From the NCBI RefSeq assembly GCF_902459465.1, contig NC_047062.1:27838001-27902000 (forward strand): a stretch of 64,000 nucleotides of DNA, given 5' to 3'. The DNA is from Asterias rubens. Lineage: Eukaryota. The translations under genes and the position numbers were made by a program. This document shows, one piece after another, positions 4,670 to 40,450 of this stretch. Within the stretch, counting starts at the first letter, position 1. Each line of letters opens with the position of its first letter. The notes below the pieces were generated by a model. That model did no database searches and had not been told where the DNA came from. It saw nothing but the letters and a program-made list of their open reading frames with translations.

Positions 4670-4750
4670 GCACAAAGGAAAATAAGATATTTTGTTTGCA
4701 TGCTGTGATAACATGAAAAAAAAAAAATAATAATAATAATAATAATAATA
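4670..4750 (+). mobile_element. 3'-terminal stub of R4/Dong-like LINE followed by (TAA)n
   Basis: GCACAAAGGAAAATAAGATATTTTGTTTGCATGCTGTGATAACATGAAA matches the 3' end of the RLE element at 12837-12885. Confidence 0.6.
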
Positions 4751-5482: not shown

Positions 5483-5720
5483 CAGGGCCCAATTTCATAG
5501 AGCTGCTAAGCATGAAAATTTGCTTAGCATGAAATTTCTTCCAACCAAATTACCAACCAAATTTCCATTTCTTGTATATCGCTTGTTACTGGTGTTCAGC
5601 TATTGTTTGCTTCTCCTGAAAATCATGTGGAAAGTTGGTTGGTAATCCTGTTTTTATCAAGGCGACAATTTCATGCAAAGCAAATTTTTGTGCTTAGCAG
5701 CTCTATGAAATTGGGCCCTG
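5483..5720. mobile_element. MITE, PIF/Harbinger-like
   Basis: ~30-bp TIR CAGGGCCCAATTTCATAGAGCTGCTAAGCA / TGCTTAGCAGCTCTATGAAATTGGGCCCTG, with CWG flanks. Confidence 0.75.
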
Positions 5721-5759
5721 GATTTGCGTTGCAAGAAGGAAATGGAGTAAGAACGTTAC

Positions 5760-7000
5760 CAAAATAGCGATTGAATGTTATCTTAATAGTGAACCGGACA
5801 AGAGAGGATATAGAAGGAGAATGATAAGCCTATGGCAAGATAAAAGAATGTTTGAGATTAGTGAGCAGCGTTTTGAGACCAGATAAATACTATCAAACGG
5901 TAATAGTGGTTTACAACCGTGGAGATTGAGGATATGAAGAGGATAGTACAAGCTGAAAGGGAAAGATTGGAGGTTGTTGCCACCAAGTACCGGAGGAGGC
6001 GGCTGCTGCTAGCTCGCAGAGTGAGGATGAGGTGGAACAGCCAGGGTTGCCTGAAGGTCAGGAAGAGGAGGGTAGTGCCGAAGCGAATGGTGTAGAGTTG
6101 ACGGAGGAGGAGGCACAGATTAAGGACAGGCTTCATAATAATAATAAAAATAATTTGAAGTCTTATATAGCGCACATATCTACCAAACAAGGTACTCAAG
6201 GCGCTGAGTATATACAAACTTCCAGAAAGATAGGTTATTACAGTGATGAATTCTGAGACCCTATTATTTAGCACATTATAAGGGTTTACAAGGTGCTACG
6301 GCGCATTAAGCAGCCACAGCCAGGAACACCGGGCGTACCCCTTCTCTTTTCCATAAGTGCACTGGGTTCTTTTACATGCGTTACACAACACATGGGACCA
6401 ACGGCTTTCTGTCCCATCCGAAGGACAAAGCAATGGTTAAGTAAGTGTCTTGCTTAAGGACACAAGTGTCACGGCTGGGGATTCGAACCTACACTCTGCT
6501 GATCAGAAACACCAGAGTTTGAATTCGGTGCTCTTAACCGCTCGGCCACGACACTTCCATGAGGTGATGGAAGCGACAAAAGAGTCAAACGGGTGGAGTA
6601 TCCCAGCTTTGTGCCGGGTCCCAAGGAAAAAGCCGGGCAAAGTGTCAGCCGTGGTAAGTAAAGTCCTTGGGTCGGTCTATCGGATACTGTGAGCAGATTT
6701 TTATCTTCCGAGGTTGGAGGGCAGCAGGGGGTTGCTGAGTAAGGTAGACAGTGTCAACATCGAGTGCAGGAGTTTGTATTGTCATGGAGAACTGAGGAGA
6801 ACTTGTTAAAAGTAGCACAGAAATACTTGAAAGCGGACGAAGTTGGGCCGAATGAGTACAAGACCATCTTGATGTTGCGCTGTGAGGCTGCACTCTCAAC
6901 TGTGCTCTGCAAAACTTCACAATTTTATAAGCACCAGGCACTTCAATTGAATAAATTTGTCATCATGTTGATTGTTAATCATCAGTGATTCTTTGGGCTA
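5760..7000 (-). mobile_element. Highly degenerate CR1-type LINE fragment (APE C-terminus + linker) interrupted by a SINE
   Basis: Minus-strand motifs LLLTSSP (APE LDLxxT), LFPWD..SWD and FNRYFGNVLT occur in colinear order across the SINE insertion. Confidence 0.55.
6135..6557 (-). mobile_element. Full-length tRNA-derived SINE (V/Meta-like core, L2-like tail)
   Basis: A box TGGCCGAGCGG, B box GGTTCGAATCC, core GTGTCCTTAAGCAAGACACTT, 3' tail AGCGCCTTGAG...GCGCTATATAAG followed by (ATT)n. Confidence 0.85.
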
Positions 7001-7110: not shown

Positions 7111-10100
7111 ATGCCCATGGTCAACAGTTGGACAGTGACCACCATTGTCCTATTGTGTGTACTCCAATTGTCATCCAACCACCTCTTCATGGAGTTTCTT
7201 AAGCAACCCACTCAAGCACGGACCTATACAAGAAAAGCACTCTTACTTATCAATGACACTGTGAAACAACAAAGGCACCGACATCCACTACCCTATGATG
7301 CATTTCAAACTGCAAGATCTCTAGGCTTACTGAATGTTAAGCCCACAAGGAGAGGAAAGAAAGCTGGACTGAAACATAAAACAAAACTACAAACACGAGC
7401 CAACCAATACTGCAACGGTCTTTCCCTGTTTTCACTGAACTGTCAGTCGGTTAAGAGCAAATCCACCCATGGAATTATTTCTGACATTGTAGTTGAACAT
7501 GACATCGACATCTTTGCCCTCACCGAGACCTGGCTTGCTGATGATGAAAGTGATGAATTTTACATCAAATCACTGACACCCAAAGGTTATGATCTCTTTA
7601 ATGTCCCACGTGGAGGCGGCGACCCGCATGGAGGGATTGCTGTACTTTATAAAAAAGGCATTAAAGTCGTGTCCACATCACCACATCAAAGCAGCCCAAG
7701 TGATCGGACTATCAAGAGTTTTGAGCACTGTGAAATTGTGTTCTCCTCAGGATCTAAGTGTTTCACACTTGTGGTAATCTACAGACCTCCAACTTCTGTC
7801 AAAAATCAACTCACTACAGGAATGTTTTTTGAAGAATTTTCAGAAGTCATGCAAGATTTCACTGTTGCTAAAGGGGATTTGGTTATCGTTGGCGACCTAA
7901 ACCTCCATTTGGATGACCACCATGACCACAACACACAACGCTTCAACGACCTAACAGAATCTTCTGGTTTTGTGCAATCTGTTGTTGGCCCTACCCATAG
8001 TCGTGGACATACGCTCGACGTTGTGATATCCCGAGACTCCGACTCTTTAGTCAAGAACATCCATGTCCTGGATCAAATCTCCGACCATAGACTCATTGCT
8101 TGCTATCTTGATATTGCTAAGCCACTGCCAGTTATGAAGACCATTACATCCAGGAAGTTCCGATCTCTCAATCTACAGTCCTTCCAGGATGATATTCTTA
8201 CCTCAGAGCTCATGGCGTCTCCTGCCTCTAATGTTTGTGACGCTGTAGAGCAGTACAACAATGTTCTCACCAACCTGTTGGACAAATATGCACCTGCATC
8301 CACTAGGTCAGTGCCAGTACGTCCCAAGCAACCCTGGTACTCTGATTCTCTGCATCTGGCTAAACGTAATCGCAGAAAAGCTGAAAGAAAATGGCTACTT
8401 ACTCGATCTAACGATGACCTCTGTCGTTACAAGGCAGTCAAGAATAACTACAACCAGCTACTATACAAATCCAAATGTAGCTTCTTCAATGACAAGATAA
8501 TCAACTGTGGTAATGATTCTAAGCAGCTATTTGGCATCATCAATGACATCCTTCATAAGAAGAAGCCATCTAAGCTCCCAGATCATGTCTGTCCTGAGGA
8601 ATTGGCAGAACGATTCTCAACATTCTTCAGTGACAAAATTCAGTGTATCAGAGACGGCCTCTCTTCTGCCACATCTGTTGCAGTTCCACGATCCAGATTA
8701 GGCTCGTCCTTGGATTCCTTCACAACAACTTGCGACGAAGAAGTAGGCGAGATTATTCTGATGTCACCTAGCCCATCTTGTGTTCTAGACCCAATACCAT
8801 CTTGGCTGGTTAAGCAGATTCTGGACACTCTTATACCTACCATCAGTAGTATTGTGAACGCATCCCTCAAATCAGGTGTAGTTCCATCTTGTCTTAAATC
8901 TGCAGTTATCACACCGTTGCTGAAGAAACCAAGTTTGGATGCCAATACTCTAAAGAATTACCGCCCTGTCAGCAACCTGACCTTCATATCCAAAGTACTT
9001 GAACGAGTTGTCGCTAAAAGCTGACCAACTACATGAGTGATCACCATCTTCATGAGCCCATGCAGTCCGCATACAAGCGCTTTCACAGCACCGAAACAGC
9101 ACTCCTTCGGGTTCACAACGACATCATGTGGACCATGGAAAAGCAAGGTATCACCATTTTAGTTCTGCTTGACCTCAGTGCCGCTTTTGACACGATCGAC
9201 CACAAAGTGTTACTAGCTCGGATGGAAGAACTGCTGGGAGTGCAGGATATTCCACTGAAGTGGTTCGCTTCATACCTGTCTGGAAGAACGCAACGTCTCC
9301 ATATCAACAACCATTTTTCGCAACCTCGTGAGCTACTGTCTTGTGTTCCACAAGGTTCAGTCCTTGGCCCCCTGCTGTTTTTGATATATACTCTTCCTCT
9401 TGGACAGATCATTCGTAAACCTGGCTTGGAACTACACATGTACGCAGACGACACTCAGATTTACACATCTATCTGCCCTGTCAAGTCTTCTGAAGTCCTT
9501 CAAAATGTATCAAAAGTCGAAGACTGCATAACTGAGGTACAGGCCTGGATGTCAACTAATTTTCTCAAACTCAACGCTGACAAGACCGAGGTAATAGCGA
9601 TCGGTTTCAGAGCCCAACTCGCCAAGTTTCATCTTCAATCAGTTAAAGTTGCAGGAGTTGATGTCTTAGTCGAAACCAAGCCAGTCAGAAATCTTGGAGT
9701 CATGTTTGACCCTGCAATGACTATGTCCGCGCAAGTTTCAAGCATCATCAAGACTGCCAACTTCTACCTCACTAACATCGGCAGGGCCCGCAGACTACTG
9801 ACTGTCGACGCAACCAAGCTTGCAGTGCACACTTTGGTCACTTCAAGACTCGACTATTGCAACAGTCTTCTGATTGGAATCAGCCAAAAACTCAAAAGGA
9901 GGCTAAATAATGTGCAACGAACAGCTGCCAGACTCATCACAAAGAAGCGCAAGTTCGACTCTATCACCCCGGAACTCATCAAACTACACTGGCTCCCAAT
10001 CCATCAAAGGATCGACTTCAAGGTCATCGTTCTCATGTTCAAGGCCTTACATCAACAAGCCCCTCATTACATCATAGACATTCTGCAAGTTGGTGCTGAA

Positions 10101-10392
10101 CGGAGACTCCTTCGGTCAAACAGCTCCTGTTCACCATACTTTGTAGTTCCAAGAACAAGTCACATCACTTTTGCCGATAGAGCCTTCTCGGTATATGGAC
10201 CCAAACTCTGGAATAAACTCCCCAATCACATCAGGGACACAACATCACTCAACACATTCAAGGCACTTCTTAAAGCCCACTTGTTTCAGGAGGCCTACCA
10301 TCAATGACTTGTTATTTCTTCTGTGCCTTCAGCGCCTTTGAGCAAACTTTTGATTTAGGCGCTATACAAATTACGTTTGATTGATTGATTGA
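7111..10392 (+). mobile_element. Near-intact L2/Crack LINE: APE endonuclease + RT ORF of ~1065 aa broken by one -1 frameshift at ~9020
   Basis: ORFs 7111-9024 and 9033-10307 carry FALTETW, GDLNLH, LDVVI, SDH, YRPVSNLTFISKVLE, LDLSAAFDTIDH, PQGSVLGP, YADD and WNKLP. The 3' UTR has the stem-loop AGCGCCTTTGAG..TAGGCGCT and an (ATTG)n tail. Confidence 0.95.
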
Positions 10393-21308: not shown

Positions 21309-23244
21309 CTGGACTCTGTCGCTGCATGCTGCTTAAGTACTGGGCAGCGGATCAGCGGTGATGCACGAAGGCGGGAAATACAGGCGGGAAGTGAACTCGA
21401 TGATGCGTGGTGAAACCTGTTGTGGAGCTTTGGGTGGTGTGTGGGGGGTGTGTGCTCACTGAACCGTGTCAGTAGGAACAAGCACAGGGGATAGTGAGGG
21501 TGTGGGGCCTAGGTGACTGAGGGTATAGATGACCCAAAGCAGTCTAATGGTTGGGGGCCTAGGGGGTGACCGTGGATATAGAAGATCCATTGGTCGGGAG
21601 GAGGGGGAGCCAGATGTCGCTGATGTGGAAGCCGATGTCTTGGGGTACGGTGTCATGCTTGTGGATCTCGATGGCCTCTCTGATGCGTCTAGGGTGCCGT
21701 GCCTGGATTGGAGCGATGATTTCTGCTGCTTCCCAGTTCACTCGGTGGTCAGTGATGTGGGAATGCTTGACGATGGCCGATTAATCGAAGTCCCCCCTCC
21801 TTCCGTGTGCTCGGTGTTCCTTAAGTCTAGTGGGAAGGTTACACCTGGTTTCCCCGACAAAAACCTTACCACATTCGCATGGAATGCGATAGACTCCGGC
21901 ACGGGTGGAGGGGTCCTTCTTGTCCTTGTGCGATTGGAGAGAGCCATGGAGTTTCTTCAGGGCGGAGTGATACACCTTGATTCCTGCTTGCTTGAAGATG
22001 CGTTGGAGGCGATGAGAGGGGGGACCTACATGTAGGTATGGTAAACTAACTGTGGGTGTGTGTGTTTGACCTTGGGTATAGGAGACCCTTTGGTCGGGGG
22101 GGGGACGGGCTTGCTTGTCTTGACTTGCTTGGCGTTGTATCCATTCCGCTGTAGAGAAGTGGTGATGTGCTGCAACTCATGCTGGAGGCTGTCCGGATCA
22201 CAAATGATAAGCCTGTTGAACCAGCGCACGGTTGACTGACGACTTGATAGCTGGATGATGGAAAGACCGCTGATGCAGGTAACGGTCGGTGTGGGTGGGT
22301 TTCCGGTAAATGCTGTGGTGGAGGGTGCCGTCGTGGTTTCTTGTGATGAGAACATCGAGAAAGGGTAACTTTCCGGAATGTTCTTGCTCCATAGTGAACT
22401 TGATACTTGAGTGTTGTTGGTTGAGGAACTGCAGAAATTCATGGAGAGAGTCCTGACCGTGGGGCCACACGACAAAAGTGTTGTCCACATAGCGGAGCCA
22501 CAGGCTGGGTCGGAGGTCAGCGGAGAGGAGTGATGAGGACTCGAACTCTTCCGTGAATATGTCAGCTAGAACCGGGGATATAGGGGATCCCATGGAGGTC
22601 CCAGCTGTCTGCTTGTAGTACTATTGCCCTGGAATTGAAAACAACTGGAGGAAACACATGTGTAAAGCAAATCATGAATTTGGTCAGGTGAAAGACAGTA
22701 CGATCAGGGAGGGATGGGTCATGTGATAATCTCTCCTTGGCCAAGAAGCAAGCTTCATCTGTAAGCACGTTGGTGAAGAGAGATTCCGCATCAAAACTTA
22801 CCAAGATATCAGTGGGTTGTAGGGTTAGGTTGCGGGTAATGTCAACAAACTGGGTGGAATTGGAAACATGGTGTTCTGTGAGACCCACCAGGGGTCGAAG
22901 TACTTTAGCTAGGTACTTGGCAGTGTCGTAGGTGGGGGAACCCCTCGAGGCAACTATGGGGCGGAGGGGAACTTCCGGCTTGTGAATCTTGGGATTGCCG
23001 AAGAACCTGGGACAGGAGGAGCTGGATGGGCGGAGCCTACGATAGAGTGGGACGGAGAGAGCTCCAGACCGGTGGATGGAAAGGAGTTTGCTGGCAACCC
23101 TCTTCTCGATGCTAGGGGTGGGGTCCTTAGGGAGGGGGCGGTATGAACCAGATGATAAAATGTTGCTTACCTTGTCAGTGTACTCCGTGCAGTCCATGAT
23201 GACTGTGGCATTCCCTTTGTCAGCATGGAGCATCAGAGTCCAGC

Positions 23245-23290
23245 ATTCTCCAGAAGACGATCAGAGCATACTGATCGAAACGTCGAGTTA
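23245..23290 (+). ncRNA. Second, identical minimal hammerhead-like motif in the inverted pseudo-LTR
   Basis: CTCCAGAAGACGATCAGAGCATACTGATCGAAACGTCGAG at 23248-23287, sense to the CLHC1 pre-mRNA. Confidence 0.5.
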
Positions 23291-23699
23291 ATCCAACGGT
23301 TCTTTTCAGAACCACCCCAACTCATTTAGAGATTGTTATTACATGGTGTTACCGCAAACTCTTCTATACCAACAATGTTGTTTAACTCGTTGGCCCAGCG
23401 AGTGCAAAACTAGTTGAGGGAATCCCCAGTTTATTGATGATCAACCTTGTTCTTTTTGAGATATGAGTGTAACAAGGTTGACTAATTAAAGATTCAAATT
23501 GCTAATACATGGCTAATTAAATAATAATTTCAAACATAACTGAATTTAATTGAATGTCATACAACTGTATAACAAGCTTCAATTTGATATACATTGTAGG
23601 ATCTAACTATTTCATATTAATACTTTGGGATATTAGGAATATTGGGAGGATATTGAGAAAATAAGGCAGAAACAAATGTTTAATAAAAAATCATAAAAA

Positions 23700-26600
23700 T
23701 CTCGATGGAAACAATACCTGTTGTGTTCCGACAGTAAGTCGATAAAATTCTTGACGAAAAACACTACTTGTTCCGACAGTAGGTCAGAACAGCTACAAAT
23801 AATAATAAAAACTAGATGGATATAGTAATTGTAATCAACAGTTACAGAGCTGTTCTGTGTTGTTTTGCTTGGATTATGTGCTTCAATGACCAAGGAGTCT
23901 ATAACTGAAAACAAGGTTTTTTAAATGTTGTGTAGTTCTTGGTATATGGTCCCACATCCGGTTGACCCGTAAGTAAAGGTCAACATGGGGTCACGGTTAC
24001 CTAAGGTTAATCTCTTATGCCTAAGGATTTTTTTTTTTTATTACTGAAAAGTTTTGAAAACGGGTGTGTACTTCTTAAAGGCAGTGGATACTATTGGTAA
24101 TTATCAAAGACTAGCCTTCACAGTTGGTGTATCTCAACATAAGCATAAAATAACAAACCTGTGAAAATTTGAGCTCCATCGGTCATTGAACTTGCGAGAT
24201 AATAATGAAAGAAAAAACACCCTTTTCACACAAAGTTGTGTGCATTTAGATGGTTGATTTCGAGACCTCAAGTTCTAAATCTGAGGTCTCGAAATCAAAT
24301 TCGTGGAAAATTACTTCTTTCTCGAAATCTATGGCACTTCAGAGAGAGCCGTTTCTCACAATGTTTTATACCATCAACCTCTCCCCATTACTCGTCACCA
24401 AGAAAGGTTTTATGGTAATAATTATTTTGAGTAATTACCAATAGTGTCCACTGCTTTTAAGTTGAATTAAGAAAAACACATTAAAGTTTTAATTTCCGTA
24501 ATTTGACACCTGATGAAGTCACAGTTACAAAAATGTGTTTTTCATACAAACTAATTTGATATTAAAGGTATGTGTGTGTACACGATGGTGTGTAACTTAT
24601 CACAATCCAATGCCTTTTTCAAAAACTGTATTAAAAAACCCTAAAAACCCTAAACCTTTGTAGGAATAAAAATGTATTGGTGAGAGTACAAATCCCATGG
24701 AGTACATGTATGTACAAAGTAATGGGTCCAGAACCCGGTTAGAAATCAAATAAAACTAGACATCAAGTGTTTGTGAACAAACACAGAGCTGTTCCTTTTT
24801 AATTTCCAAGGTTCAAGGGGTCTATAATTGAAAAGAACCTGAAGATCGGTTGCATGGTTCTTGAGATATGGTCCCACTTCCGGTTGACCCGGAAGTAAAG
24901 GTCAATTTGGGGTCAAGGTAATCCAAGTTCAATCTTTAGAGCTCAAAGGGTCTATAACTGAAAAGAACTTGAACATTGGTTGTGCAGTTCTTGAGATAAG
25001 GTCCCACTTCCGGTTGACCCGAAAATAAAGGTCAACATGGGGTCATACCTACCTGATGCGATTGTCCAATGCCTAAGTAGTCTGAAAATCGGTTGTGTAG
25101 TTCTTGAGAAATGGTCCCACTTCCGGTTGACCCAAAAGAAGAGGTCAAAATGGGGTCACGGATTTTCCCCAACAAAATTTAATGCCTTAGGAATCTATAA
25201 CTAAAGAAAAAAATTAAATCGGTTGTGTAACTCTTCAGATTTGGTCCCACTTCCGGTTGACCCGGAAGTAGAGGTCAAATCGGGGTCACGGTTACCCGAG
25301 GCAATTCTCCTATGCCTAATGAGTCTAATACTGAAAAAAACTTTGAAATCGGCCGTAAACTTCTTGAGATATAGTGCTGCAAAGAAAAACTCATTAAAGC
25401 TTCTAATTAGCATAAATGAACATGTGATGACGTCACAGTCTTAAAATTGTATTTTTCGTACTAATAAATTTCATAAGGTACACGATGGTATGCAACTTAC
25501 CCCAATGCAATGCCTTTTGCAAAATCTCAATTTTGTATTGCATTAACCATGGAGAAGCTATTGCAATGCGTTGAAAGTGACTGCATCCAGTTAATGAGGT
25601 ACTACGTTGTACCCATGATGCCAAGATTTTTAATTTATTGTTAATTATAGACGTACTTTGATTGATTTTAATGGACTAAAACATCTCTTATTAGAATCAG
25701 TTACTCCAATCCCCAAGGAGTCTATATCTACAAACAGTCTGTTAAACGGCCGTGTACTTCTTGAGATATGGTGCTACAAAGATTTCCCAATTAAATATGC
25801 AAATATGGGTCACATGGTTAATTAATTACGAATAAAAAAAAAAAAATGGTCCGTGGTTTGATGTTTGATCTAGTACAAGTTGATTTCACAGAACTCTTAA
25901 CCACCAAACTCTGCGCTTATGATCAGCATTTTCGGCTTACTGTGTTTTTAAACATCATATCATGTCATGCATGCACACAGGTTATGTTGGGCTTACAATT
26001 GAGAAAAAGAAAAGGCAACACTATCGATATAAAGATAAGAATCTAACTTAAATATTACAAAAAGAAATATTTTTTTAGTTTTGGGGATAAAAAAAAACGT
26101 TATTTTCATACGGAGATTCAAACTCACTAGTATCAGATAAGTAAGCGCGACTGATGACCACTAGGCTATAAGGGCCAATGCTTTTTTCATGGGTTTACAT
26201 GTATATATATTAACAGGGGGGATTATGATCCAGCGAAATAATTCTCGTTTCATGATTTTGCGAACATTGTCACTAAATATGAACTGCTAACGCCTATAAC
26301 TATTAAGTAGGGTTGAAATGTAGTATTAGATGCCTTTAGGAGTTTTTGACGACGTCGTCAAAACCCCTATTCAATTACGCACATTCGTCCACGGACGACG
26401 CCACCTCGGAGTCTAAGTTTGACATTTTTTCACTCATTTCTCAAAAACTACAACACCACAGCAGGTAATATTTTAAGGGAAGCTTTCAACTGTCATTATC
26501 TTCAAACTGTTGAAGTTTAGTGTAATTCTGTGGACACCATGGTATGTCGCCGTCGTCAAAAACCCCTATTTATATACGCACGTTCGTTAAACGAAAACCC

Positions 26601-29554
26601 TAAATTTTCGTGTACTAAGTATATTGGCCCAGAACTCGGTTAGGAAACGAAGAAACAGAGACTGTGCTGTGGTCCAGAACGTATGTAGAAAAACAAGAAA
26701 AAGAGACTTGAGTAGACTCCTCTCAAGAAGTCACAACTCATGATAGGTACATACTGAATTGCATTTACCATAGAGAATGTTTAACAATAACATGGAAGTG
26801 ACTGCATCCAGTTATGTTCAAACGCCTAGACTCATCTCAAGAAGTCACAACTCATGATAGGTACATACTGTATGGCATTTACCAAAGAGAATATTTCACA
26901 ATAACATGAAAGTGACTGCATAAAGTTTACAAATTAAAAATTCAAATGAAGACCACGTGGTTAATTAATGAAGAATTTTTACACTTTTTTATTAGAGTAA
27001 AGCTTAGGCTCTAAGCTTCAATTTGATATGATTTAACTATTTTATCCTAATACTTTAGGAGTAGGGGCCTGAACAAAAACGCTGTACAAACGCTATGGGG
27101 TTTTAGGCGGAAACAAAGAATAATAATAATAACTAGACATCAAGTGTTTGTGAACAAACACAGAGCTGTTCCTTTTTAATTTTCAAGGTTCAAGGGGTCT
27201 ATAATTAAAAAGAAACTGAAAATCGGTTGCATGGTTCTTGAGATATGGTCCCACTTCCGGATGACCCGGAAGTAGAGGTCAATTTGAGGTAACTGGTTTT
27301 GCAAGTTATCTCCAATCCCCTAGGAGTCCGTAACTACAAACAGTCTAAAAATCGGCCATGTACTTCTTGAGATATGGTCCCACTTCCGGTTGACCCGGAA
27401 GTAGATGTCAACTTGAGGTGACGGTTTTTCAAAATTAATCTTTAACGCCCAAGGGGTAAAAAAATGAAAAAAGTTTGAAAATCGGTAATATAGCACTTGA
27501 GATATGGTCCCACTTCCGGTTAACCCGGAAGTAGAGGTCAACTTGAGGTCACGGGTTTTCAAAATTAATCTTGAATCCCCAAGGAACCTATACCTACAAA
27601 CAGGGTAAGAATCCGCCGTGAACTTCTTGAGTTATGGTGCTACAAAGATTTCCCAATAAAATATGCAAATGAGGGTCACGTGGTTAATTAAATAAGAATT
27701 TTAAAACTTTTTTGTTAGAGTAAAGGTTATGTTCTAAGCTTCAATTTGATAATATGATTTAACTCTTTTGACATTATGGTTTAGGAGCTAAGGAATAAAC
27801 AAAAAATGTGTACAAATGCTATGGGGTTTTAGGCGGAAACAAAGAATAATAATAATAATAATAATAAAAACTAGACATCAAGTGTTTGTGATCAAACACA
27901 GAGCTGTTACTTTTTAATTTTCAAGGTTCAAGGGGTCTATAATTGACAAGAAACTGAAGATCGGTTGCATGGTTCTTGAGATATGGTCCCACTTCCGGTT
28001 GACCCGGAAGTAGAGGTCAATTTGAGGTAACTGGTTTTGCAAGTTATCTCCAATCCCCTAGGAGTCCGTAACTACAAACAGTCTAAAAAGCGGCCGTGTA
28101 CTTCTTGAGATATGGTCCCACTTCCGGTTGACCCGGAAGTAGAGGTCAACTTGAGGTGACGTTTTTCAAAATTAATCTTTAACGCCCAAGGGGTCTAAAA
28201 CTGAAAAAAGTTTGATAATATAATAATAATAAAAACTAGACATCAAGTGTTTGTGACCAAACACAGAGCTGTTCCTTTTTAATTTTCAAGGTTCAAGGGG
28301 TCTATAATTGAAAAGAAACTGAAGATCGGTTGCATGGTTCTTGAGATATGGTCCCACTTCCGGTTGACCCGGAAGTAAAGGTAAATTTGGGGTCAAGGTA
28401 ATCCAAGTTCAATCTTTAGAGCTATAAGGGTCTCTAACTGAAAAGAACTTGAACATTGGTTGTGTAGTTCTTGAGATAAGGTCCCACTTCCGGTTGACCC
28501 GGAAATAAAGGTCAACATGGGGTCATACCTACCCGATGCGATTGTCCAATGCCAAAGTAGCCCATAACTGAAAAAAGTCTGAAAATCGATTGGGTTGTTT
28601 TTGAGATAAGGTCCAACTTCCGGTTGACCCGGAAATAAAGGTCAACATGGGGGTCTAAGTTTTCAAAGTTAATATTTAATGCCTAAGTAGTCTATAACTG
28701 AAAAAAAGTTTGAAAATCGGTTGTGTAGTTCTTGAGAAATGGTCCCACTTCCGGTTGACCCAAAAGAAGAGGTCAAAATGGGGTCACGGATTTTCCCCAA
28801 CAAAATTTAATGCTTAGGAATCTATAACTAAAGAAAAAAATTAAATCGGTTGTGTAACTCTTCAGATTTGGTCCCACTTCCGGTTGACCCGGAAGTAGAG
28901 GTCAAATCGGGGACACGGTTACCCGAGGCAATTCCCCTAAATTGTATTTTTCGTACTAATAAATTTCATAAGGTACACGATGGTATGCAACTTACCCCAA
29001 TCCAATGCCTTTTGCAAAATCTCAATTTTGAATTGCATTAACCGTGGAGAAGCTATTGCAATGCGTTGAATGTGACTGATAATAAAAATAATAAAAATCG
29101 CGACGAACCCGGAAGTAGAGGTCAACTTGAGGTCACGATTTTTCAAAGTTGATTTTTAACGCCCAAGGGGTCCAAAACTGAAAAAAGTTTGAAAATCGGT
29201 TATATAGCACTTGAGATATGGTCCCACTTCCGGTTAACCCGGAAGTAGAGGTGAACTTGAGGTCACGGGTTTTCAAAATTAATCTTCAATCCCCAAGGAG
29301 TCTATACCTATAAACAGGGTAAGAATCCACCGTGAACTTCTTGAGATATGGTGCTACATAGATTTTCCAATTAAATATGCAAATGAGGGTCACGTGGTTA
29401 TGTAACTAAGAATTTTAAAACTTTTTTGTTAGAGTAAAGCTTATGTTCTAAGCTTCAATTTGATATATGATTTAAATCTTTTGACCTTACGGTTTAGGAG
29501 CTAAGGAATAAACAAAAAACATGTACAAATGCTATGGGGTTTTAGGCGGAAACA

Positions 29555-29595
<41 letters not shown>

Positions 29596-29760
29596 TAATA
29601 AAAATCTCGACGAAAACAATAGCTGTTCCGACTGGATCGGAACAGCTAATAAAGTTTGATAATATAATAATAATAACAATAATAAAAATCTCGACGAAAA
29701 CAATAGCTGTTCCGACTGGATTGGAACAGCTAATAATAAAAATCTCGACGAAACAATGAA
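23700..29760 (-). mobile_element. Cluster of head-to-tail HINE/Helentron-type modules carrying a ~130-bp internal satellite (17 cores)
   Basis: HINE 3' ends (revcomp CAGCTCTGTGTTTGT-TC-ACAAACAC..CTAGTTT) at ~24757, 27130, 27870 and 28235, with a related AACTAGA end at ~23812. 5' subTIR hairpins AGCTGTTCCGA-N5-TCGGAACAGCT at 29620-29735, (AAT)n tracts, and core GGTCCCACTTCCGGTTGACCCGGAAGTAGAGGTCAA at ~130-bp period. Confidence 0.75.
24079..24456. mobile_element. Kolobok-like MITE family A
   Basis: TTAA flanks; TIR AGGCAGTGGA(T/C)ACTATTGGTAAT. Related copies at 34096, 40242 and 49955. Confidence 0.85.
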
Positions 29761-29950
29761 GCTTGTTGTATGTTCTTTGCAGCTATATATAAAACCCAAT
29801 AACTCAATTGTCCCCCAAGTGACTAATTTTTGCAGAGCCCATCACAATTAATAGACTCCTCAAGGAAGTCCACACCGTAATGCATAAGTCATGGAGAAGC
29901 CCTATATAGGACTCTTTCTCTGTACACAGATACAGAGTCCTAACTTTTAA

Positions 29951-30533
29951 GGCCCGTTTCTGGGGCGGAAAATTTTCAAAGCTTCATAACTCAAATCTTA
30001 CCTGCAACAAGCCACTAATTTCAACAGATTCACAATCCATGGCGGCATACATTTTTCTGCGGTGGGTTTTGGTCGTCATATATTCTTCACAAATCAGTCA
30101 TTTTCGTGAAATAATGCAGCTCCCAACGTTAAAAAATTCCCGTTTTTGATCGTTTTCTCACAGTGTTGTTTGCTGCCATGCGTACACGTATACACACGCG
30201 TGCAAGACGCAATATGCAAGACGCATGAATTCTTGGTCACCGTATCTTGACTGCACAGCGTTAACACGCAAACGCAACGTAATATTTGCACGTGGTGCGT
30301 CTTGCGTACATGTACGGCAGACTGAGAATACAAAAAAAAATAGGAATTTCTTAATGTTTGGAGCTGCATTATTTCATTAAAATGTAAATTTGTGAAGAAC
30401 ATATGACGATCAAAACCCACCACAGAAAAATATATGCTGCCATGGATTGTGAATCTGTTGAAATTAGTGGCTTGTTGCAGGTAAGATTTGAGTTATGAAG
30501 CTTTGAAAATGTTTCCGCCCCAGAAATGTACCC
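29951..30533. mobile_element. Long-TIR (~190 bp) MITE
   Basis: 29951-30140 is inverted at 30340-30533 (TTTCTGGGGCGGAAA..TTTCAAAGCTTCATAACTCAAATCTTACCTGCAAC); flanks TTAA / TTAT. Confidence 0.85.
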
Positions 30534-31469
30534 TTATATCCAGGACGTCACTGTAGTATAATACAAAAGTGTAAGACCACCAGGGCTAGGAGAAGGTATA
30601 CCAATGTCATGTAAGTGACTGCATCTGGTTTATGAAGTACTACGTTGTACCCATTATGCCCAGATGTTCACTTAATCGTTAATTATAGACGTACATTGAT
30701 TGCTTTTAATGGACTGAAACAACCATTATTATAATCAGTTAATTTTTCATTACAGAATATGAAATTTAGGAAATGAACAGATAAATTATTTTCAAGTTAT
30801 TGTGAATTATTGTGTTTTTGACCAGTAAAACGTTTCCACTTTTAGGGACATATGTTTTGTACACTAAAAAGATAACGCGCAAACGTATGACGTCATGATG
30901 ACGTGACCAAAAATGTTAAGCCAGAAATCACATCTGCAATACAATACAAGTCTATAACTGAAGAAAGTTCAAGGATTAGATGTTACTTCTTGGGATATGG
31001 TGTAAACAAGATCGGCTAATTAAATATTCATACCGTTGGCACGCAAATAATTAATTAAGAGTGTTAATCTAGTTACATGTATGTCTACAATTTAAGTCCG
31101 GCCATAAGCTTAACTATGGTATATGATTTGTCAACTTCTGATATTTCTATAAGAGGGACATTTGACACTAAGAAAAGTCAAGTGTTAACGATTTTAGGGA
31201 AAGAAAGAAAAATATAAAAAAATCAAAAAAATCTCGCTGATTACAATAGCTGTTCCGACGGAAGCTAATAACAAATATTTAGACGAAAACAATACCGTAG
31301 GTCGGTCTAAAATTTCAAACCCATGACCTTTGCCATTTTAGAGTTGATGTCTTACCAAATAGACACTGAGATTGCCCAGTAGCTAGAGGCAGTTTGAACA
31401 TAATTTAGCAGCGGGTCCTGCAACAATTTAATAGATGTTAAATTTGCATCGGGATAAAGAATATTATTA

Positions 31470-31640
31470 AATACATTGGACAGCTAATAATGCTGATTGG
31501 TCAACACTCGATCACATGGGCATGTATTAACAAGTGATAAAGGACCGGCTCTGGAAACTAGCGAATAAATGGCCCCTAAACCAGCATACATTGTGTAAAA
31601 CTAGTGTTTGCGCTTTGCGCTGTATGTTTATTGAATTTAT
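31470..31640. mobile_element. Isolated terminal arm of the Crypton-like family
   Basis: ATTAAATAC..GCTGATTGGTCAA..CTGGAAACTAGCGAATAAATGGCCCCTAAACCAGC is the inverse of 18990-19140. Confidence 0.55.
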
Positions 31641-32287
31641 TTAAACATTGGTTCTTTGCACACTCGACGTATGCACTGAAAATGTATACATTTTGATGTA
31701 ACGGGTGTGGACGGACGTATAAACCCATATGTCGATATATGGTCGTGTTTATATATGGTAGAGCTCACAGTTGACAAAAAAAATGTGGCCCTTGAACTTG
31801 AGTACAACAATAAAAGCAAACGCATATGATTTGAGGCATTGCATGGTGAGGTATCAATATATCGTAGGAGGTCCCGTTTTAGAGGTGTCCCTAAAATCGT
31901 GGCAAATCTTTTACCTCTCTGTGCGCGATGTAAACAGTCCCTAGATAAAAATTGTGTGGTTTTATTTGCCAAGCAAAGAGTCTCCTCTCCCTTGACCAAA
32001 ACTTAGAAACACGTAAGGCTCCACTGGATATTTGCACTTGTAAATGCAAAAAGTTTGGTATTTTAAGCATTTCTACAAGGTACAAAAATATGTCATAATG
32101 TTGAGGCCATATAAAAATATTTGCCCACCGAAAAAGTTTCATCAAACACTATTTCAATTCACAATTCATGTTGATCAAATCATGTGACTGAATATTTTGC
32201 TGAGCATTCTGGAAAAAAAATACAGAGGCTTAAAGAAGCCATGTGCCTTATATCATTTTCTAATATTTTTGGAGATTTTTTTTTTAA

Positions 32288-32650
32288 AGCCATTGGACCC
32301 TTTCGGTTCAGAAAAAAAATAAAAGTTCACAGATTTACAAATAACTTACAGGGTTTACAGAAGGCAATGGTGAAAGACTTCTCTTGAAATATTATTCCAT
32401 GAAATGCCTTACTTTTTGAGAAAACAGCAAAACAATATAAATTCTCGTTAACGAGAATTACGGATTTATTTTGAACATGTCATGACACGGCGAAACGCGC
32501 GGAAACAAGGGTGGATTTTTCCGTTGTTTTCTCCCGACTCCTATGACCGATAGAGCTTAAATTTTCACAGGTTTGTTATTTGATATAGAAGTTGTGGTAC
32601 ACAAAGTGTGGGCCTTGGACAACACTGTTTACCGAAAGGGTCCAATGGCT
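32288..32650. mobile_element. Kolobok-like MITE family C
   Basis: TTAA|AGCCATTGGACCCTTTCGG ... CCGAAAGGGTCCAATGGCT|TTAA. Confidence 0.85.
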
Positions 32651-32809
32651 TTAAGCCTCCGATCAATATTATTATTTATATTAAAATTTAAACGATCAGC
32701 TTGTTGATTCAATTATCACTGTTTATTTATACGCTTTATTATAAATTTTAAGAGTAAAAAAAAGGGGAAATAAATAAATAAAAATCAGATTTGAAAGCTA
32801 AAGTAGTAG

Positions 32810-33000
32810 TCCCAGCCAATTTTCTATATTCTCCGCCCGGGTAGTAGTTAAAAAGCAGGACAGTTCTTTTCAGAACTGAGAAGTCTCCCGAACATCCGAT
32901 AAATCTACTCCGCGGTAGTAGAATAAAGAAAGACAGTTCTCCAAGAACAAACTCTACCTGGCAAGTAGATACACACTATCATGACTATACTGCAAACCAT
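32810..33000 (-). repeat. Short interspersed repeat; inverted copy at ~62495-62700
   Basis: GTGTATCTACTTGCCAGGTAGAGTTT..GAGACTTCTCAGTTCTGAAAAGAAC is present in both copies. Confidence 0.75.
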
Positions 33001-33071
33001 ATATATAATAAAGCAAAGCAAAAGTTTCACACTTTGACAAGTTTAACAAAAAACAATTTCATAAAAAGGAA

Positions 33072-33250
33072 TTTATTAATGGGAATAAGAGTGCAAGGAC
33101 CGGGTCTTCACTACGGGGGAATGACCGGGTTGATGGCTGGCTGCTGTTAACGGACCACACCTCCAGCTTAGTCCGTTAACAGTGCCAGCCACGAAACCGG
33201 TCATTCCCCCATAGTGAAGACCGGGTCCTCACACTGTTATTCTTTAATAA
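33072..33250. mobile_element. ~180-bp palindromic element (hairpin of the Crypton-like family)
   Basis: Arms AATAAGAGTG..GACCGGGTCTTCACTA.GGGGGAATGACCGG..CTGTTAACGGAC and their reverse complement; same as 43567-43740. Confidence 0.75.
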
Positions 33251-33284
33251 TTGTGGGTTTTACCTGTACATTATTACCCTTAAA

Positions 33285-34020
33285 TGGTCTAGTTGGTAAG
33301 ACATCTGCTCTAGAGTATCAAAGATCGTGGGTTTCAATCCCACCCGAGTGATAATGCCTATCGTGGGTTTCAATCCCACCCGAGTGATAAGATCGTGGGT
33401 TTCAATCCCACCCGAGTGATAAGATCGTGGGTTTCAATCCCACCCGAGTGATAAGATCGTGGGTTTTAATCCCACCCGAGTGATAAGATCGTGGGTTTCA
33501 ATCCCACCCGAGTATCAAAGATCGTGGGTTTCAATCCCACCCGAGTGATAAGATCGTGGGTTTCAATCCCACCCGAGTGATAAGATCGTGGGTTTCAATC
33601 CCACCCGAGTGATAAGATCGTGGGTTTCAATCCCACCCGAGTGATAAGATCGTGGGTTTCAATCCCACCCGAGTGATAAGATCGTGGGTTTCAATCCCAC
33701 CCGAGTGATAAGATCGTGGGTTTCAATCCCACCCGAGTGATAAGATCGTGGGTTTCAATCCCACCCGAGTGATAAGATCGTGGGTTTCAATCCCACCCGA
33801 GTGATAAGATCGTGGGTTTCAATCCCACCCGAGTGATAAGATCGTGGGTGTCAATCCCACCCGAGTGATAAGATCGTGGGTTTCAATCCCACCCGAGTGA
33901 TAAGATCGTGGGTTTCAATCCCACCCAAGTGATAAGATCATGGGTTTCAATCCCACCCAAGTGATAATGCCTATCGTGGGTTTCAATCCCACCCGAGTGA
34001 TAATGCCTGTGATTTTGTTC
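33285..34020 (+). repeat. tRNA-derived SINE head whose T-arm/B-box region is amplified into 21 tandem 32-bp units
   Basis: A-box-like TGGTCTAGTTGG at 33285, then (GATAAGATCGTGGGTTTCAATCCCACCCGAGT)n, resuming AATGCCTGTGATTTTG. Confidence 0.9.
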
Positions 34021-34095
34021 ACAGAAATCTTCGATGTAAGGGTAAAAACCAAAATAAATTTTCTTTATCCCAAATGCAAATTATAAATTTATTAA

Positions 34096-34481
34096 AGACA
34101 CTGGACACTATTGGTAATTGTCAAAGACCAGTCTTCTCAGTTGGTGTATCTCAACATGTGCATAAAATAACAAACCTGTGAAAATTTTAGCCCAATTGGT
34201 CGTCGAAGTTGCGAGAAAAAAATGTTCGAAAAAACACCCTTGTCACACTAAGTTGTGTGCTTTCAGATGCTTGATTTCGAGACCTCAAATTGTAAATCCG
34301 AGGTCTCGAAATCAAATTCGTGGAAAATTACTTTTTTTCTCAAAACTACGTCACTTCAGAGGGAGCTGTTTCTCACAATGTTTAATTCCATCCACCTCTC
34401 CCCATTACTCGTACCCAAGTAAGGTTTTATGCTAATAACTATTTTGAGTAATTACACATGTACCAATAGTGTCCACTGCCT
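34096..34481. mobile_element. Kolobok-like MITE family A
   Basis: TTAA|AGACACTGGACACTATTGGTAATT ... CCAATAGTGTCCACTGCCT|TTAA. Confidence 0.85.
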
Positions 34482-34614
34482 TTAAATAGTAAATAAATAA
34501 AAATCCACATTAAGTATTTCACTAATTTTAAGAGTTGTTTTATGTTGTAATTTTCAGTTACCGTGAATCAATATTCTATCCTAACATGGTGTCTGTCTTC
34601 TTTTGGATATCTAG

Positions 34615-34796
34615 GTTCATCGACTACAAGCATTAAGGATGTGGTGTTATGTGATGCTGATACAGAATATGAATCCTGGATGCAGATCATATACAAATGT
34701 CAAGACAATGGTTTGTATGACGTAGGACTAGAACTTTTAGCTGCTGTAACTGTGCTCCAAGCAATTAGAAAGGCTTCAGAAACAATAACTAAGTAA
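34615..34796 (+). CDS. CLHC1: CLHC1 orthologue, probable terminal coding exon
   Basis: atatctAG acceptor, phase 1. Translates GSSTTSIKDVVLCDADTEYESWMQIIYKCQDNGLYDVGLELLAAVTVLQAIRKASETITK*, similar to CLHC1 ..[23 protein letters not shown]. The AA|GTAAT at the stop could alternatively be a donor. Confidence 0.8.
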
Positions 34797-36204
34797 TTTG
34801 CTGTGTTATATAAGCATCACATGCCTTAACAGTTGATACCATACTGATGTTGGACAGTACTTCATTGTACAATGGTAAAACTAAGAAATAGTCATGCACA
34901 CTTAACTTTGTACATTTTGTTTGTAGTTTTTCTAAGGCACTTAATGTTGCATGTCTGCTTTTATGTTATTAACCGTATTGCCACCAATCCTTGTGTCGAA
35001 CTCCGACAATAAGAAAAGTAGTTCAGTATTATTTTAATTATCAATATCAACCCAAAAAATTATTATTTTAATTGGTACATTAGGTACATGTACATGTTCA
35101 TGAAGTGTTCTGTAAAAGTAGAATATTTGGTTGAATACATGTATACATACATTTCCACATGGTCAAGGATTAGAGTTTTAATGAGCTTGATTTATTTGCA
35201 TTCCCATTCTTTCTTTATCAGGGATGAGATTCTGAAAAACTTAAAAAGACTGAAAATTTGTCACATTGCGGGAGGAGCACATGTAAACTAAATTCCCTTA
35301 ACTATTTTTTTTCACTTGCTGGCTGGATGATTCAAACAATTTGTGGGTCGCTTGCAAGTTTGTTACAAAGCAATCAATTTTGGAAACTAACACGAACAAA
35401 TTTGGGCATTTTTTTTAAATAACTTTTTTTTCCAAATTAATTTCTGCCCTTGTAAAAGGTTTTTTCATCAACAACCATTTTCATGGGGTCTTGATGTTAG
35501 GTTCGGTTGTATTAAAAACTTCTTTTGCAATAAAATGTTCATGATATATTGCCGATATAACAGGAACTGGAAGGTTGAGATGAGACCCAGGAAATTCAAG
35601 TTTTGTTTCCCTACTTGCCTGAAAGAAGGGCGTACTTGTGCATGCAATTGTTTAATAAAATAAACGATCATGCACGATCGCAAACTCATTAAATATAGCG
35701 CAAATCAAGACTCAAACCATTTTAAGAAACTTCAAAACAATCTCTCTTTGGGAATTTATTACCGTATAACTTGATTATTGTGACATGGAACATTTTTTGG
35801 ACTCGCCAGACAGACTAGAAAATAAAAGATATGACTCTCCCGCTGTCGCATCAAAAGTAAATTTTTGCTAAAGTCAGAGATCTTATAAAAAGTCTGAATT
35901 TAAAACAAAAGACAAAAAGACGGAATTTCGCCAAAAGGCAGAAGAATCTCATCCCTGCTTTATATATTAACAAATGTTTTTTCCATTTTAAATGTTCATC
36001 AGCCCTCATTTTGACCTGCTAGTATGTATAGTTGATGCACTGTCTTCTCTACTTTCCATACAATTATAATCCACACAAAAAATCTTTATGTGATCCTTCA
36101 ATTTTTTTAAATTTTCCTTTCAGAGTCAAGGATAAATAGAAAGGAATTTTTGGATAACCAATATGCATAGACCTTTTGGCAACTACCCATTGGGCAAGTG
36201 CCAA

Positions 36205-39428: not shown

Positions 39429-40241
39429 CTGAGAGTAAAGCATAGAATAAATAATGTGAATGATAAAGTGAGATGAGATATAAATAGCTGGCAACAGTGT
39501 TTCTGTGGAAACAGGGAAATTATGGTAAGTTGTTTTCTACACCTTCTGTGTGATGGTGAAATCCAAGTAATGTCATTGCTTTGCAGAAAACATGTACAGT
39601 GTACATTACAAGCAAGTTTCACATGTTTAATTGCACGATTTTGTTTACTAAATTGAAGATGGTGTGACAACATACAATCTTAAGTTTAAAAAACCACTGT
39701 CAGATAAAGTGTATGAAAAATCAAGAATTTCAAATCAAAAAGAATGAAAACTAGACTTAAGTTTTTGTCATAACAAAAACAATGTGTTCGGCTAACGGGA
39801 GTACAAAAATACAACCCTGGTGGACAATTAACAAAAGAAAAAACCCATGAAATTTAGTCTTTTCAAAGCATTTACATGCAATTCCGGTATAGACAGGTCA
39901 AAAGGTCAAGAGAAGGTCACCAAGATTCCATATTTGTGAAGAACGTGAAACTCTTTCATATGATGTGTAGATTGTCAAAATAGCTTTTGTGGTTGAGGAC
40001 CTAGGAACTTATGAATAAGTGAACCACACAATCAACGTGTTGAGTCGGTTATTTTACTAAGCCATCACAATATTACATTTTGGCGACGAGCGGGATTTTG
40101 TATATCCCACAACATCATCATTTCTTAGTTCTTGTATCATAATTCGTCGCTGCCATCTTTCCAGTCGTTCCATGTAAGCAGTGAACGGACCAACTGGGAA
40201 AAGTCTGTCAAGAGGATTGGAACGATGTTTATCGTCTTTAA

Positions 40242-40450
40242 AGACACTGGACACCTTTGGTAATTGTCAAAGACCAGTCTTCTCACTTGGTGTATCTCAA
40301 CATAGGCATAAAATAATAATAATGAAAGAAAAAACACCCTTGTCTCACGAAGTTGTGTGCTTTCAGATGCTTGATTTCTAGACCTCAAAAATCTAATTCT
40401 TAGGTCTCAAAATCAAATTTGTGGAAAATTACTTCTTTCTCGTAAACTAC
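40242..40450. mobile_element. Kolobok-like MITE family A, right end truncated
   Basis: TTAA|AGACACTGGACACCTTTGGTAATTGTCAAAGACC; body matches 34096 onward. Confidence 0.75.

What the first reader, a model, noticed from the sequence alone, without database searches (positions are those of the whole stretch)
23950..29270. Satellite of 17 composite nuclear-receptor elements (ER8+DR5) overlapping an ETS dyad
Seen: every ~130-bp unit has the core ACTTCCGG-TTGAC-CCGGAAGT (8-bp-arm palindrome, two ETS-consensus sites), which embeds TGACCC-N8-AGGTCA-N5-RGGTCA. Nine units have a perfect DR5 (AGGTCA at 23977, 24899, 25029, 25142, 25272, 27535, 28509, 28770, 29119) and seven have all three half-sites perfect. 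The spacers vary (N5 = acatg, atttg, aaatg, aatcg, acttg; N8 = ggaagtag, gaaaataa, aaaagaag), yet spacing is invariant in nearly all units, even where the ETS/hairpin arm has decayed. Known: RGKTCA-N5-RGKTCA is the canonical RAR/RXR element, TGACCC-N8-AGGTCA is the everted-repeat type of the gammaF-crystallin RARE, and CCGGAAGT is the ETS/GABP consensus. Inference: a Helentron-borne satellite that spreads dense clusters of hormone/retinoid response elements. It could act as an enhancer, as a receptor sink, or as the TE's own expression switch. Caveats: several units are recent duplicates and so not independent, and GGTCA-rich cores are common in marine-invertebrate HINE satellites.
Basis: partly seen in the sequence, partly recalled or inferred. 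Interest (0 to 1): 0.75.

Follow-up and report, generated by a model that had tools for sequence, protein, structure and literature searches.

The report
Transposon-borne satellite with constrained GGTCA/ETS core
The 17 repeats are real. They are the internal tandem repeats of a very abundant non-autonomous rolling-circle transposon (Helentron/HINE type) in a sea-star-like genome, and their receptor-like motifs are kept in the transposon lineages that spread but not protected in resident copies, so hormone-response function is unproven.

Summary
**Observation: confirmed.** There are 16 full units and one truncated unit of about 130 bp at 23954-29246.

**What it is.**
- The units are the central tandem repeats of a HINE, a non-autonomous Helentron, lying on the minus strand.
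- The window holds at least six nested or head-to-tail copies.
- All HINE modules are present, and one complete single copy lies in metagenome locus L017.

**Tests on 83 units** (16 from the window, 67 from 17 independent metagenome contigs):
- The half-sites (3-5% off consensus) are much better kept than the N8 and N5 spacers (12-15%).
- A 26-bp motif-free-plus-ETS block upstream is kept just as well.
- Substitutions on shared (internal) tree branches: 0.47 per column in half-sites against 2.75 in spacers. Private changes do not differ (1.65 against 2.17).
- In recent window duplicates, half-sites change as fast as non-core DNA (3.4% against 3.9%).
- Spacers take indels at the background rate, and N7 and N4 variants have spread.
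- The right ETS arm and the palindrome decay, with no compensatory changes.

**Reading.** The core looks like a protein-binding platform selected at the level of the transposon lineage. It does not behave as a spacing-dependent RAR/RXR element. No binding or expression data exist.

The scan has noted HINEs elsewhere in this genome, but not this motif.

The parts
23893..24060 (-). Oldest, diverged element copy: one unit (core at 23954) plus the start of a second unit, which is cut by an unrelated insertion
24072..24484 (.). Unrelated MITE-like insertion with terminal inverted repeats, splitting a unit; other copies at 34089-34513, 49950-50321 and 40238-40449
   Evidence: (72-94% identity)
24754..24795 (-). 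Right flank (RF) of copy A: 3' subTIR GGAACAGCT, an 8-bp-stem palindrome, and about 13 nt ending in CTAGTT
24816..25375 (-). Array A: 4 full units (cores at 24876, 25006, 25119, 25249) and one partial proto-unit
25382..25583 (-). Alternative internal segment 'T2', shared with 28925-29078 and 24469-24627
26916..27132 (-). Internal segment 'T1' (variable segment between microsatellite and array); its array-side end is a proto-unit that shares unit columns 1-60
27131..27172 (-). RF of copy B
27193..27643 (-). Array B: 3 full units (cores at 27253, 27382, 27512) and a proto-unit
27644..27866 (-). T1 of copy B' followed by an (AAT)n microsatellite
27869..27910 (-). RF of copy B' (two substitutions)
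27931..28187 (-). Array B': 2 units (cores at 27991, 28120)
28234..28275 (-). RF of copy A'
28296..28936 (-). Array A': 5 units (cores at 28356, 28486, 28616, 28747, 28876)
29107..29357 (-). Array C: one truncated unit, one full unit (core at 29226) and a proto-unit; 93% identical to 27393-27870
29358..29605 (-). T1 and an (AAT)17 microsatellite
29601..29757 (-). Left flank (LF) modules, two full and one partial: 5' subTIR AGCTGTTCCGA plus its complementary IR (12-bp stem, -13.3 kcal/mol, z -7.5) and an inner conserved 20-mer

Best explanation
The units are the central tandem repeats of a high-copy non-autonomous Helentron (HINE) that lies on the minus strand of the window in nested, head-to-tail copies. 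Each unit holds a core of about 57 bp (alignment columns 44-100). It consists of a 26-bp block that ends in a perfect ETS-type site, followed by three GGTCA(A)C motifs: one inverted and two direct, the direct pair 11 bp apart. The spacers between these motifs are free to vary. Shown here: changes in these motifs are rarely passed on to descendant units, yet they arise at about the normal rate in resident copies. Inferred: the core is a set of protein-binding sites needed in cis by element lineages that keep amplifying, for example to recruit a factor that favours mobilisation, replication or accessibility in the germ line. It is not a hormone-response element kept by the host at each locus. 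The binder is unknown. It could be a host ETS factor or nuclear receptor, or a Helentron-encoded protein. The fixed spacing that RAR/RXR dimers would need is not under detectable constraint.
For: HINE architecture. The 5' subTIR plus IR palindrome, the (ATT)n microsatellite, a variable segment, the array, and the 3' subTIR plus palindrome ending about 13-18 nt before a common CTAGTT terminus are all present. They appear in the window and, in the same relative order and orientation, in metagenome loci; RF next to the array is seen in 9 loci. L017:553-1214 is one complete copy with unique flanks. The RF stem keeps pairing through a double change in L002 and L016.

Copy number. 2500-6085 contigs were laid in each of three DNA runs carrying three organism labels.

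Constraint (fraction of units departing from consensus). Half-sites 3-5%, columns 44-69 3-5%, spacers 12-15%, rest of the unit 12-23%. Half-sites against spacers: p = 4e-4 to 7e-4.

Parsimony counts on the unit tree. Internal-branch changes: 8 in 17 half-site columns against 33 in 12 spacer columns (p = 4e-7). Terminal-branch changes: 28 against 26 (p = 0.19). Contrast of internal against terminal, half-sites against all unconstrained columns: odds ratio 0.33, p = 0.005.

Seven recent paralogous unit pairs in the window. Half-sites 4/119, spacers 1/84, non-core 17/436.

Indels per column per unit. Columns 44-75: 0.001. Spacers: 0.009-0.010. Unit 5' part: 0.0105.

Ascertainment. No undetected units lie inside the arrays, so this bias is small.
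Against: Only 83 units were sampled out of thousands. With such sparse sampling, 'terminal' branches still contain propagated history. Core columns as a whole (half-sites plus columns 44-69) show about half the terminal changes of the rest (p = 6e-7). Some in-situ constraint, gene conversion among units, or detection bias therefore cannot be excluded. The metagenome loci were found with an anchor inside columns 43-62, which inflates conservation of that stretch in that set; the window set, found without the anchor, shows the same 5%. The recent-duplicate comparison rests on 6 core differences. No function is known for HINE central repeats. The autonomous partner was not found, and no binding, chromatin or strand-specific RNA data were available.
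Confidence: 0.68

Rival explanations
1. One reading: the units are true composite nuclear-receptor elements (DR5 plus ER8, RAR/RXR type) with an ETS dyad. Spread by the transposon, they act at many loci as retinoid- or hormone-responsive enhancers, or as a receptor sink.
For: All three hexamers fit RGKTCA, in spacings known for RAREs (motif definition in PMC8834484). The hexamers are conserved and the spacers are not. Starfish have RAR and RXR, and retinoic acid triggers their metamorphosis (PMC5910596). Transposons are known to seed such sites: Alu DR2 elements (PMC1785376) and Helitron heat-shock elements (PMC6927752).
Against: Spacing is not protected, and N7 and N4 variants spread. A propagated subfamily carries AGGTTA, which is outside RGKTCA (9 units). 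The 18 bp upstream of the left ETS arm hold no receptor or ETS motif and are conserved equally well. Recent resident copies lose half-sites at the neutral rate. Any two half-sites within about 10 bp can be named DRn, IRn or ERn, so the match is less specific than it looks. It is not yet known whether echinoderm RAR/RXR recognises RAREs (PMC8834484).
Confidence: 0.14
2. The core is a structural signal: a hairpin or cruciform formed in the single-stranded rolling-circle intermediate. Two stems are possible: ACTTCCGG/CCGGAAGT, or GTTGACC/GGTCAAC, the latter being the same sequence as the 'ER8'.
For: The consensus forms an 8-bp stem (-9.1 kcal/mol, z -2.0). The second stem has at least 6 of 7 pairs in 74 of 83 units. 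The LF and RF of the same element do use hairpins. The unit palindrome and the LF palindrome share 8-bp-arm, 5-nt-loop geometry and a TTCCG...CGGAA core (my own comparison, weak).
Against: There are no compensatory double changes in either stem. Hairpin 1 is complete in only 28 of 83 units, and its two central pairs are Watson-Crick in 57-67% of units. Changes on one arm are not matched on the other. A unit with a decayed arm folds no better than shuffled sequence (z -0.3). The third GGTCA and the upstream block lie outside any stem.
Confidence: 0.07
3. There is no function. The uneven conservation comes from concerted evolution (gene conversion among units that favours the most similar stretch), from the history of a few founder unit types, or from sampling.
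For: The units fall into a few types that recur across loci, so the number of independent events is modest. Arrays are prone to homogenisation. The anchor and the profile used for detection favour the core.
Against: Conversion tracts would carry the 5-8-bp spacers along with the hexamers, so they cannot explain a sixfold contrast at that scale. The left-arm CpG is 93% intact, against 59-72% at the three other CpGs of the unit. Arrays contain no undetected units. The window units, which I did not select, show the same pattern.
Confidence: 0.11

Closest known systems
HINE / DINE-1-like non-autonomous Helentrons carrying satellite-like central repeats (Thomas et al. 2014, PMC4067079; Cg_HINE of the Pacific oyster, PMC7492417)
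   Same: The modular build is the same: 5' subTIR with complementary IR, a microsatellite, a variable segment, a short array of 2-9 units of 130-180 bp in fixed orientation, a 3' subTIR plus palindrome, and no coding capacity. Copy number is high, and insertions into other repeats are frequent.
   Different: The subTIR is shorter (9-10 bp, against 11-15). The microsatellite is (ATT)n. Most copies are joined head to tail at the microsatellite and lack an LF. The LF module is itself multiplied, from 2 to 5 times. Motif-level constraint inside the central repeats has not been described in the papers I read.
Helitron-borne clusters of heat-shock elements in Caenorhabditis (Garrigues et al. 2019, PMC6927752)
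   Same: A rolling-circle transposon carries dense, repetitive clusters of a transcription-factor motif and scatters them through the genome.
   Different: In that case HSF-1 binding and gene induction were shown by ChIP and expression data. Here nothing is shown beyond sequence. The element superfamily also differs (Helitron against Helentron).
Alu DR2 retinoic acid response elements and Alu HNF4alpha sites in primates (PMC1785376, PMC3252374)
   Same: RGKTCA direct repeats are carried by a very abundant non-autonomous element.
   Different: Alu is a SINE with one set of sites per copy. The spacing is DR2, and receptor binding was tested. Here the sites sit in a tandem array of a DNA transposon, and the spacing is not protected.
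gammaF-crystallin everted-repeat RARE (ER8) and the class I ETS site ACCGGAAGTG (recalled from memory, not checked here)
   Same: The hexamer orientation and 8-bp gap match. The reverse complement of the left arm matches the 10-mer exactly.
   Different: The resemblance is in sequence only. The ER8 is equally well described as a 7-bp inverted repeat.

Membership tests
HINE (non-autonomous Helentron) | 5' subterminal inverted repeat accompanied by a nearby complementary IR | tested here: met
   AGCTGTTCCGA(C), a 3-9-nt loop, then its complement. Found in the window at 29621-29647 and 29705-29731, five times in L009 and twice in L017. The loop varies and the stem is constant. DNA fold -13.3 kcal/mol, z -7.5.
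HINE (non-autonomous Helentron) | 3' subTIR complementary to the 5' subTIR, 38-60 bp from the 3' end | tested here: met
   (C)GGAACAGCT is the reverse complement of the 5' subTIR over 9-10 bp, shorter than the 11-15 bp reported. It starts about 42-46 bp before the common CTAGTT terminus.
HINE (non-autonomous Helentron) | Palindrome 8-35 bp from the 3' terminus | tested here: met
   An 8-bp stem ends 13-18 nt before CTAGTT in 13 copies. A compensatory double change is seen in L002 and L016.
HINE (non-autonomous Helentron) | Microsatellite and central tandem repeats in a fixed orientation | tested here: met
   (ATT)n follows the LF. Arrays have the same orientation relative to the RF in all 9 loci and 4 window copies that contain an RF.
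HINE (non-autonomous Helentron) | T-rich (TT) target with no target-site duplication | tested here: inconclusive
   Unique flanks in L017, L009, L010 and window 24754 are compatible (..AATT | element | ..CTAGTT). No empty site was available.
HINE (non-autonomous Helentron) | Autonomous partner with Rep/helicase/endonuclease sharing the termini | not tested
   The window has no Rep/Hel ORF; its ORFs are non-LTR APE/RT.
Retinoic acid / nuclear-receptor response element (DR5, ER8) | Two RGKTCA half-sites | tested here: met
   Window: 9 of 17 units for DR5 and 12 of 16 for ER8. Independent units: 42 of 67 and 38 of 67.
Retinoic acid / nuclear-receptor response element (DR5, ER8) | Spacing that is fixed and functionally constrained | tested here: not met
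   The indel rate in the spacers equals that of unconstrained unit DNA. N7 and N4 forms recur in several loci.
Retinoic acid / nuclear-receptor response element (DR5, ER8) | Receptor binding and ligand-dependent transcription | not testable with these tools
   No binding, chromatin or reporter data. All runs are stored as contigs only, and the one 'RNA?' run is a guess.
ETS-binding dyad | Two GGAA-core sites kept as a palindrome | tested here: not met
   Left site intact in 64 of 83 units; right site in 39 of 83; both with the 5-nt gap in 28 of 83 (10 of 16 in the window, 18 of 67 in independent units). The right CpG is 59% intact against 93% for the left. A single conserved ETS-type site remains possible.
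Classical satellite DNA | Long homogeneous arrays | tested here: not met
   Arrays hold 1-5 units in the window and up to 9 full units (10 counting one partial; 11 profile hits in all) in L016. Units within an array differ by 20-25%.

The most novel reading that the evidence does not exclude
The central repeats of this sea-star Helentron derivative are selected platforms for host transcription factors: an ETS factor plus a GGTCA-reading nuclear receptor. The non-autonomous element needs them to be mobilised. As a by-product it has seeded thousands of receptor-type sites, tying a rolling-circle transposon to retinoid or other hormone signalling in an animal whose metamorphosis is retinoic-acid dependent.
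Probability: 0.12. Interest if true: 0.75.

Novelty: new member of a known kind. Interest (0 to 1): 0.4.

Why it matters
HINE central repeats are usually treated as passive satellite-like cargo. Here the pattern of inherited against private substitutions suggests that short motifs inside the repeats matter for the success of the element lineage. That gives a concrete, testable handle on what these repeats do. If the binder proved to be a nuclear receptor or an ETS factor, this would be an invertebrate counterpart of the Alu DR2 and Helitron heat-shock-element cases. It would also provide a large natural set of candidate response elements in echinoderms, where PMC8834484 states that RARE recognition by RAR/RXR is still unclear. 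If not, it remains one more HINE family.

Tried and rejected
- **Rfam**, permissive, 22000-35000: nothing in the units, so no tRNA, 5S or snRNA origin.
- **Literature search** for three core strings: no paper holds them.
- **Read laying** was meant to give a genome-wide per-position variant profile. It showed very high copy number in three organism labels, but only 40 of about 500 variant rows are printed, so no profile could be built. All runs are contigs and the 'RNA?' label is a guess, so nothing can be said on transcription.
- **Coding origin** rejected: 130 is not a multiple of 3, and no ORF is present.
- **Pol III A/B box**, compared by eye: no fit.
- **Hairpin covariation** tested and not found.
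- **Similarity of the unit palindrome to the LF palindrome** (shared TTCCG...CGGAA, same arm and loop lengths): noted, but too weak to use.
- **Organism**: earlier agents of this scan call the genome the starfish Asterias rubens. I could not verify this, because the window holds only transposons and run names are coded.
- **The big protein searches, structure tools and further collection scans** were not used. No protein is at stake here.
Full report

Yes. The 21-nt core occurs 16 times (0-3 mismatches), all on the + strand, between 23954 and 29246. A 17th unit starts abruptly inside the core at 29107. The composite TGACCC-N8-AGGTCA-N5-RGGTCA has 7 perfect and 6 one-mismatch matches, where 100 dinucleotide shuffles give none.

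The units do not form one satellite. They form five short arrays of 1-5 units, separated by other modules of the same element family and by an unrelated MITE-like insertion at 24072-24484.

**2. What it is**

Self-comparison shows element-sized paralogues:

| Pair | Identity |
|---|---|
| 24752-25583 and 28232-29078 | 82% |
| 26922-27482 and 27644-28219 | 89% |
| 27393-27870 and 29107-29583 | 93% |

Read on the minus strand, every copy has the order described for HINEs (PMC4067079; PMC7492417):
- a left flank with a subTIR (AGCTGTTCCGA) and its complementary IR, forming a 12-bp stem (-13.3 kcal/mol, z -7.5);
- an (ATT)n microsatellite;
- a variable segment, which I call T1 or T2;
- the tandem array;
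- a right flank with the complementary subTIR (GGAACAGCT) and an 8-bp-stem palindrome, then 13-18 nt ending in CTAGTT.

A scan of JGI metagenome contigs used an anchor that lies just upstream of the receptor and ETS motifs. It returned 21 contigs, 17 of which carry arrays.
- Nine of them show the same right flank in the same orientation next to the array.
- L017:553-1214 is one complete element with unique flanks.
- In L002 and L016 the right-flank stem keeps pairing through a double change.
- In 8 of 13 right flanks, CTAGTT runs through (ATT)n straight into the T1 of a next copy. Head-to-tail multimers are therefore the usual state.
- The LF module itself is multiplied, 2 to 5 times.

Contigs of three DNA runs under three organism labels gave 2500-6085 matching pieces each, with a fifth at 99% identity or more. 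The family is very abundant. Earlier agents of this scan name the genome as the starfish Asterias rubens; I did not verify that. The window around the arrays holds only other transposons.

**3. Is the core constrained, and where?**

I aligned 83 full units to a profile: 16 from the window and 67 from the metagenome contigs. No units inside the arrays went undetected.

| Part of the unit | Units departing from consensus |
|---|---|
| Three half-sites | 3-5% |
| Left ETS arm | 3% |
| 18 bp upstream of it (no receptor or ETS motif) | 5% |
| N8 spacer | 12-15% |
| N5 spacer | 15% |
| Rest of the unit | 12-23% |

- Half-sites against spacers: p = 4e-4 to 7e-4.
- Half-sites against the upstream block: not different.
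- Spacers against the rest of the unit: not different.

The conserved object, however, is a 57-bp core (columns 44-100) in which only columns 76-77, 83 and 91-95 are free.

The CpG of the left arm is intact in 93% of units. The three other CpGs of the unit are intact in 59-72%.

**4. At what level does selection act?**

I counted changes by parsimony on a tree of the 83 units.

| Column class | Internal-branch changes (inherited by two or more units), per column | Terminal-branch (private) changes, per column |
|---|---|---|
| Half-sites | 0.47 | 1.65 |
| Columns 44-69 | 0.88 | 1.79 |
| Spacers | 2.75 | 2.17 |
| Rest of the unit | 2.78 | 3.43 |

- Half-sites against spacers: p = 4e-7 on internal branches, p = 0.19 on terminal branches.
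- Contrast of inherited against private changes, half-sites against all unconstrained columns: odds ratio 0.33, p = 0.005.
- Seven recently duplicated unit pairs in the window: half-sites differ at 4/119, spacers at 1/84, non-core columns at 17/436. Four of the six core differences hit a half-site.

Mutations therefore arise in the motifs but are seldom carried forward. This is what selection on the amplifying element lineage predicts, and not what host-level maintenance of each site predicts.

The caveat is sparse sampling. Core columns as a whole still show about half the private changes of the rest. Gene conversion, residual lineage history in the terminal branches, or some local constraint remain possible.

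**5. Tests specific to the receptor/ETS reading**

- *Spacing.* Indel events per column per unit are 0.009 (N8) and 0.010 (N5), the same as in the unit's unconstrained 5' part (0.0105). Columns 44-75 show 0.001 and the third GGTCA shows none. N7 and N4 variants recur in several loci, so they were propagated. Dimeric receptors depend on spacing, so this counts against a DR5/ER8 mechanism. Binding to single extended half-sites would not be affected.
- *Palindrome.* It is complete in 28 of 83 units. There are no compensatory changes in it, nor in the alternative GTTGACC/GGTCAAC stem, which is the same sequence as the ER8. A decayed unit folds no better than shuffled sequence.
- *A subfamily outside the consensus.* Nine units forming a propagated subfamily carry AGGTTA.
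- *Look-elsewhere effect.* The same elements also carry an octamer-like ATGCAAAT and a CRE-like TGACGTCA. Transcription-factor-like words are easy to find in these transposons.

**6. Comparison and verdict**

The structure belongs to the HINE kind. Five structural features were tested and met, the target site is inconclusive, and the autonomous partner was not tested.

As a hormone-response element it meets the half-site criterion and fails the spacing criterion. Binding cannot be tested with these tools.

The closest functional analogues are:
- Helitron-borne heat-shock elements in Caenorhabditis (PMC6927752);
- Alu DR2 elements (PMC1785376).

Starfish do use retinoic acid at metamorphosis (PMC5910596). 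Whether echinoderm RAR/RXR reads RAREs at all is still open (PMC8834484).

My reading is an ordinary kind of element with one feature worth following: motif-specific constraint in its central repeats at the level of the transposon lineage. The binder is unknown. Probability that it is a nuclear receptor or ETS platform in the strong sense: about 0.12-0.15.

Noticed in passing
window 23293-23339 (+): Rfam histone 3' UTR stem-loop match above the gathering score (35.6 against 34 bits, E 2.5e-7). It lies next to a minus-strand ORF (22562-23233) that looks RT-like by eye but has no Pfam hit. There is no obvious histone gene beside it.
   Followed up: no
window 24072-24484; also 34089-34513, 49950-50321, 40238-40449: MITE-like element of about 410 bp with terminal inverted repeats of about 24 bp, inserted inside a satellite unit. 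Copies are 72-94% alike.
   Followed up: partly
window 25425-25440, 28939 region, 30880-30900: The alternative internal segment T2 carries a CRE-like palindrome, TGATGACGTCAC. The same words appear as a genome-wide loose-end consensus in the laid contigs.
   Followed up: no
window 29601-29757; L009:244-512; L017:556-652: The 50-bp left-flank module (subTIR-IR hairpin plus inner 20-mer) is itself tandemly multiplied 2 to 5 times. The stems are constant and the loops vary.
   Followed up: partly
L002:1033-1061, L016:3495-3523: The right-flank palindrome of a sister subfamily keeps its stem through a compensatory double change (T to A paired with A to T).
   Followed up: partly
window 27583-27700, 25716-25830, 29296-29400: At the array edge there is a proto-unit. 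It shares the first 60 or so unit columns, then has a different core containing ATGCAAAT and GGGTCACGTGG. This suggests the array arose from the element's own sequence.
   Followed up: partly
window 7111-10307, 688-1587, 48148-48828: Non-LTR retrotransposon ORFs (APE endonuclease and reverse transcriptase). The window is transposon-rich, and I recognised no host gene.
   Followed up: partly
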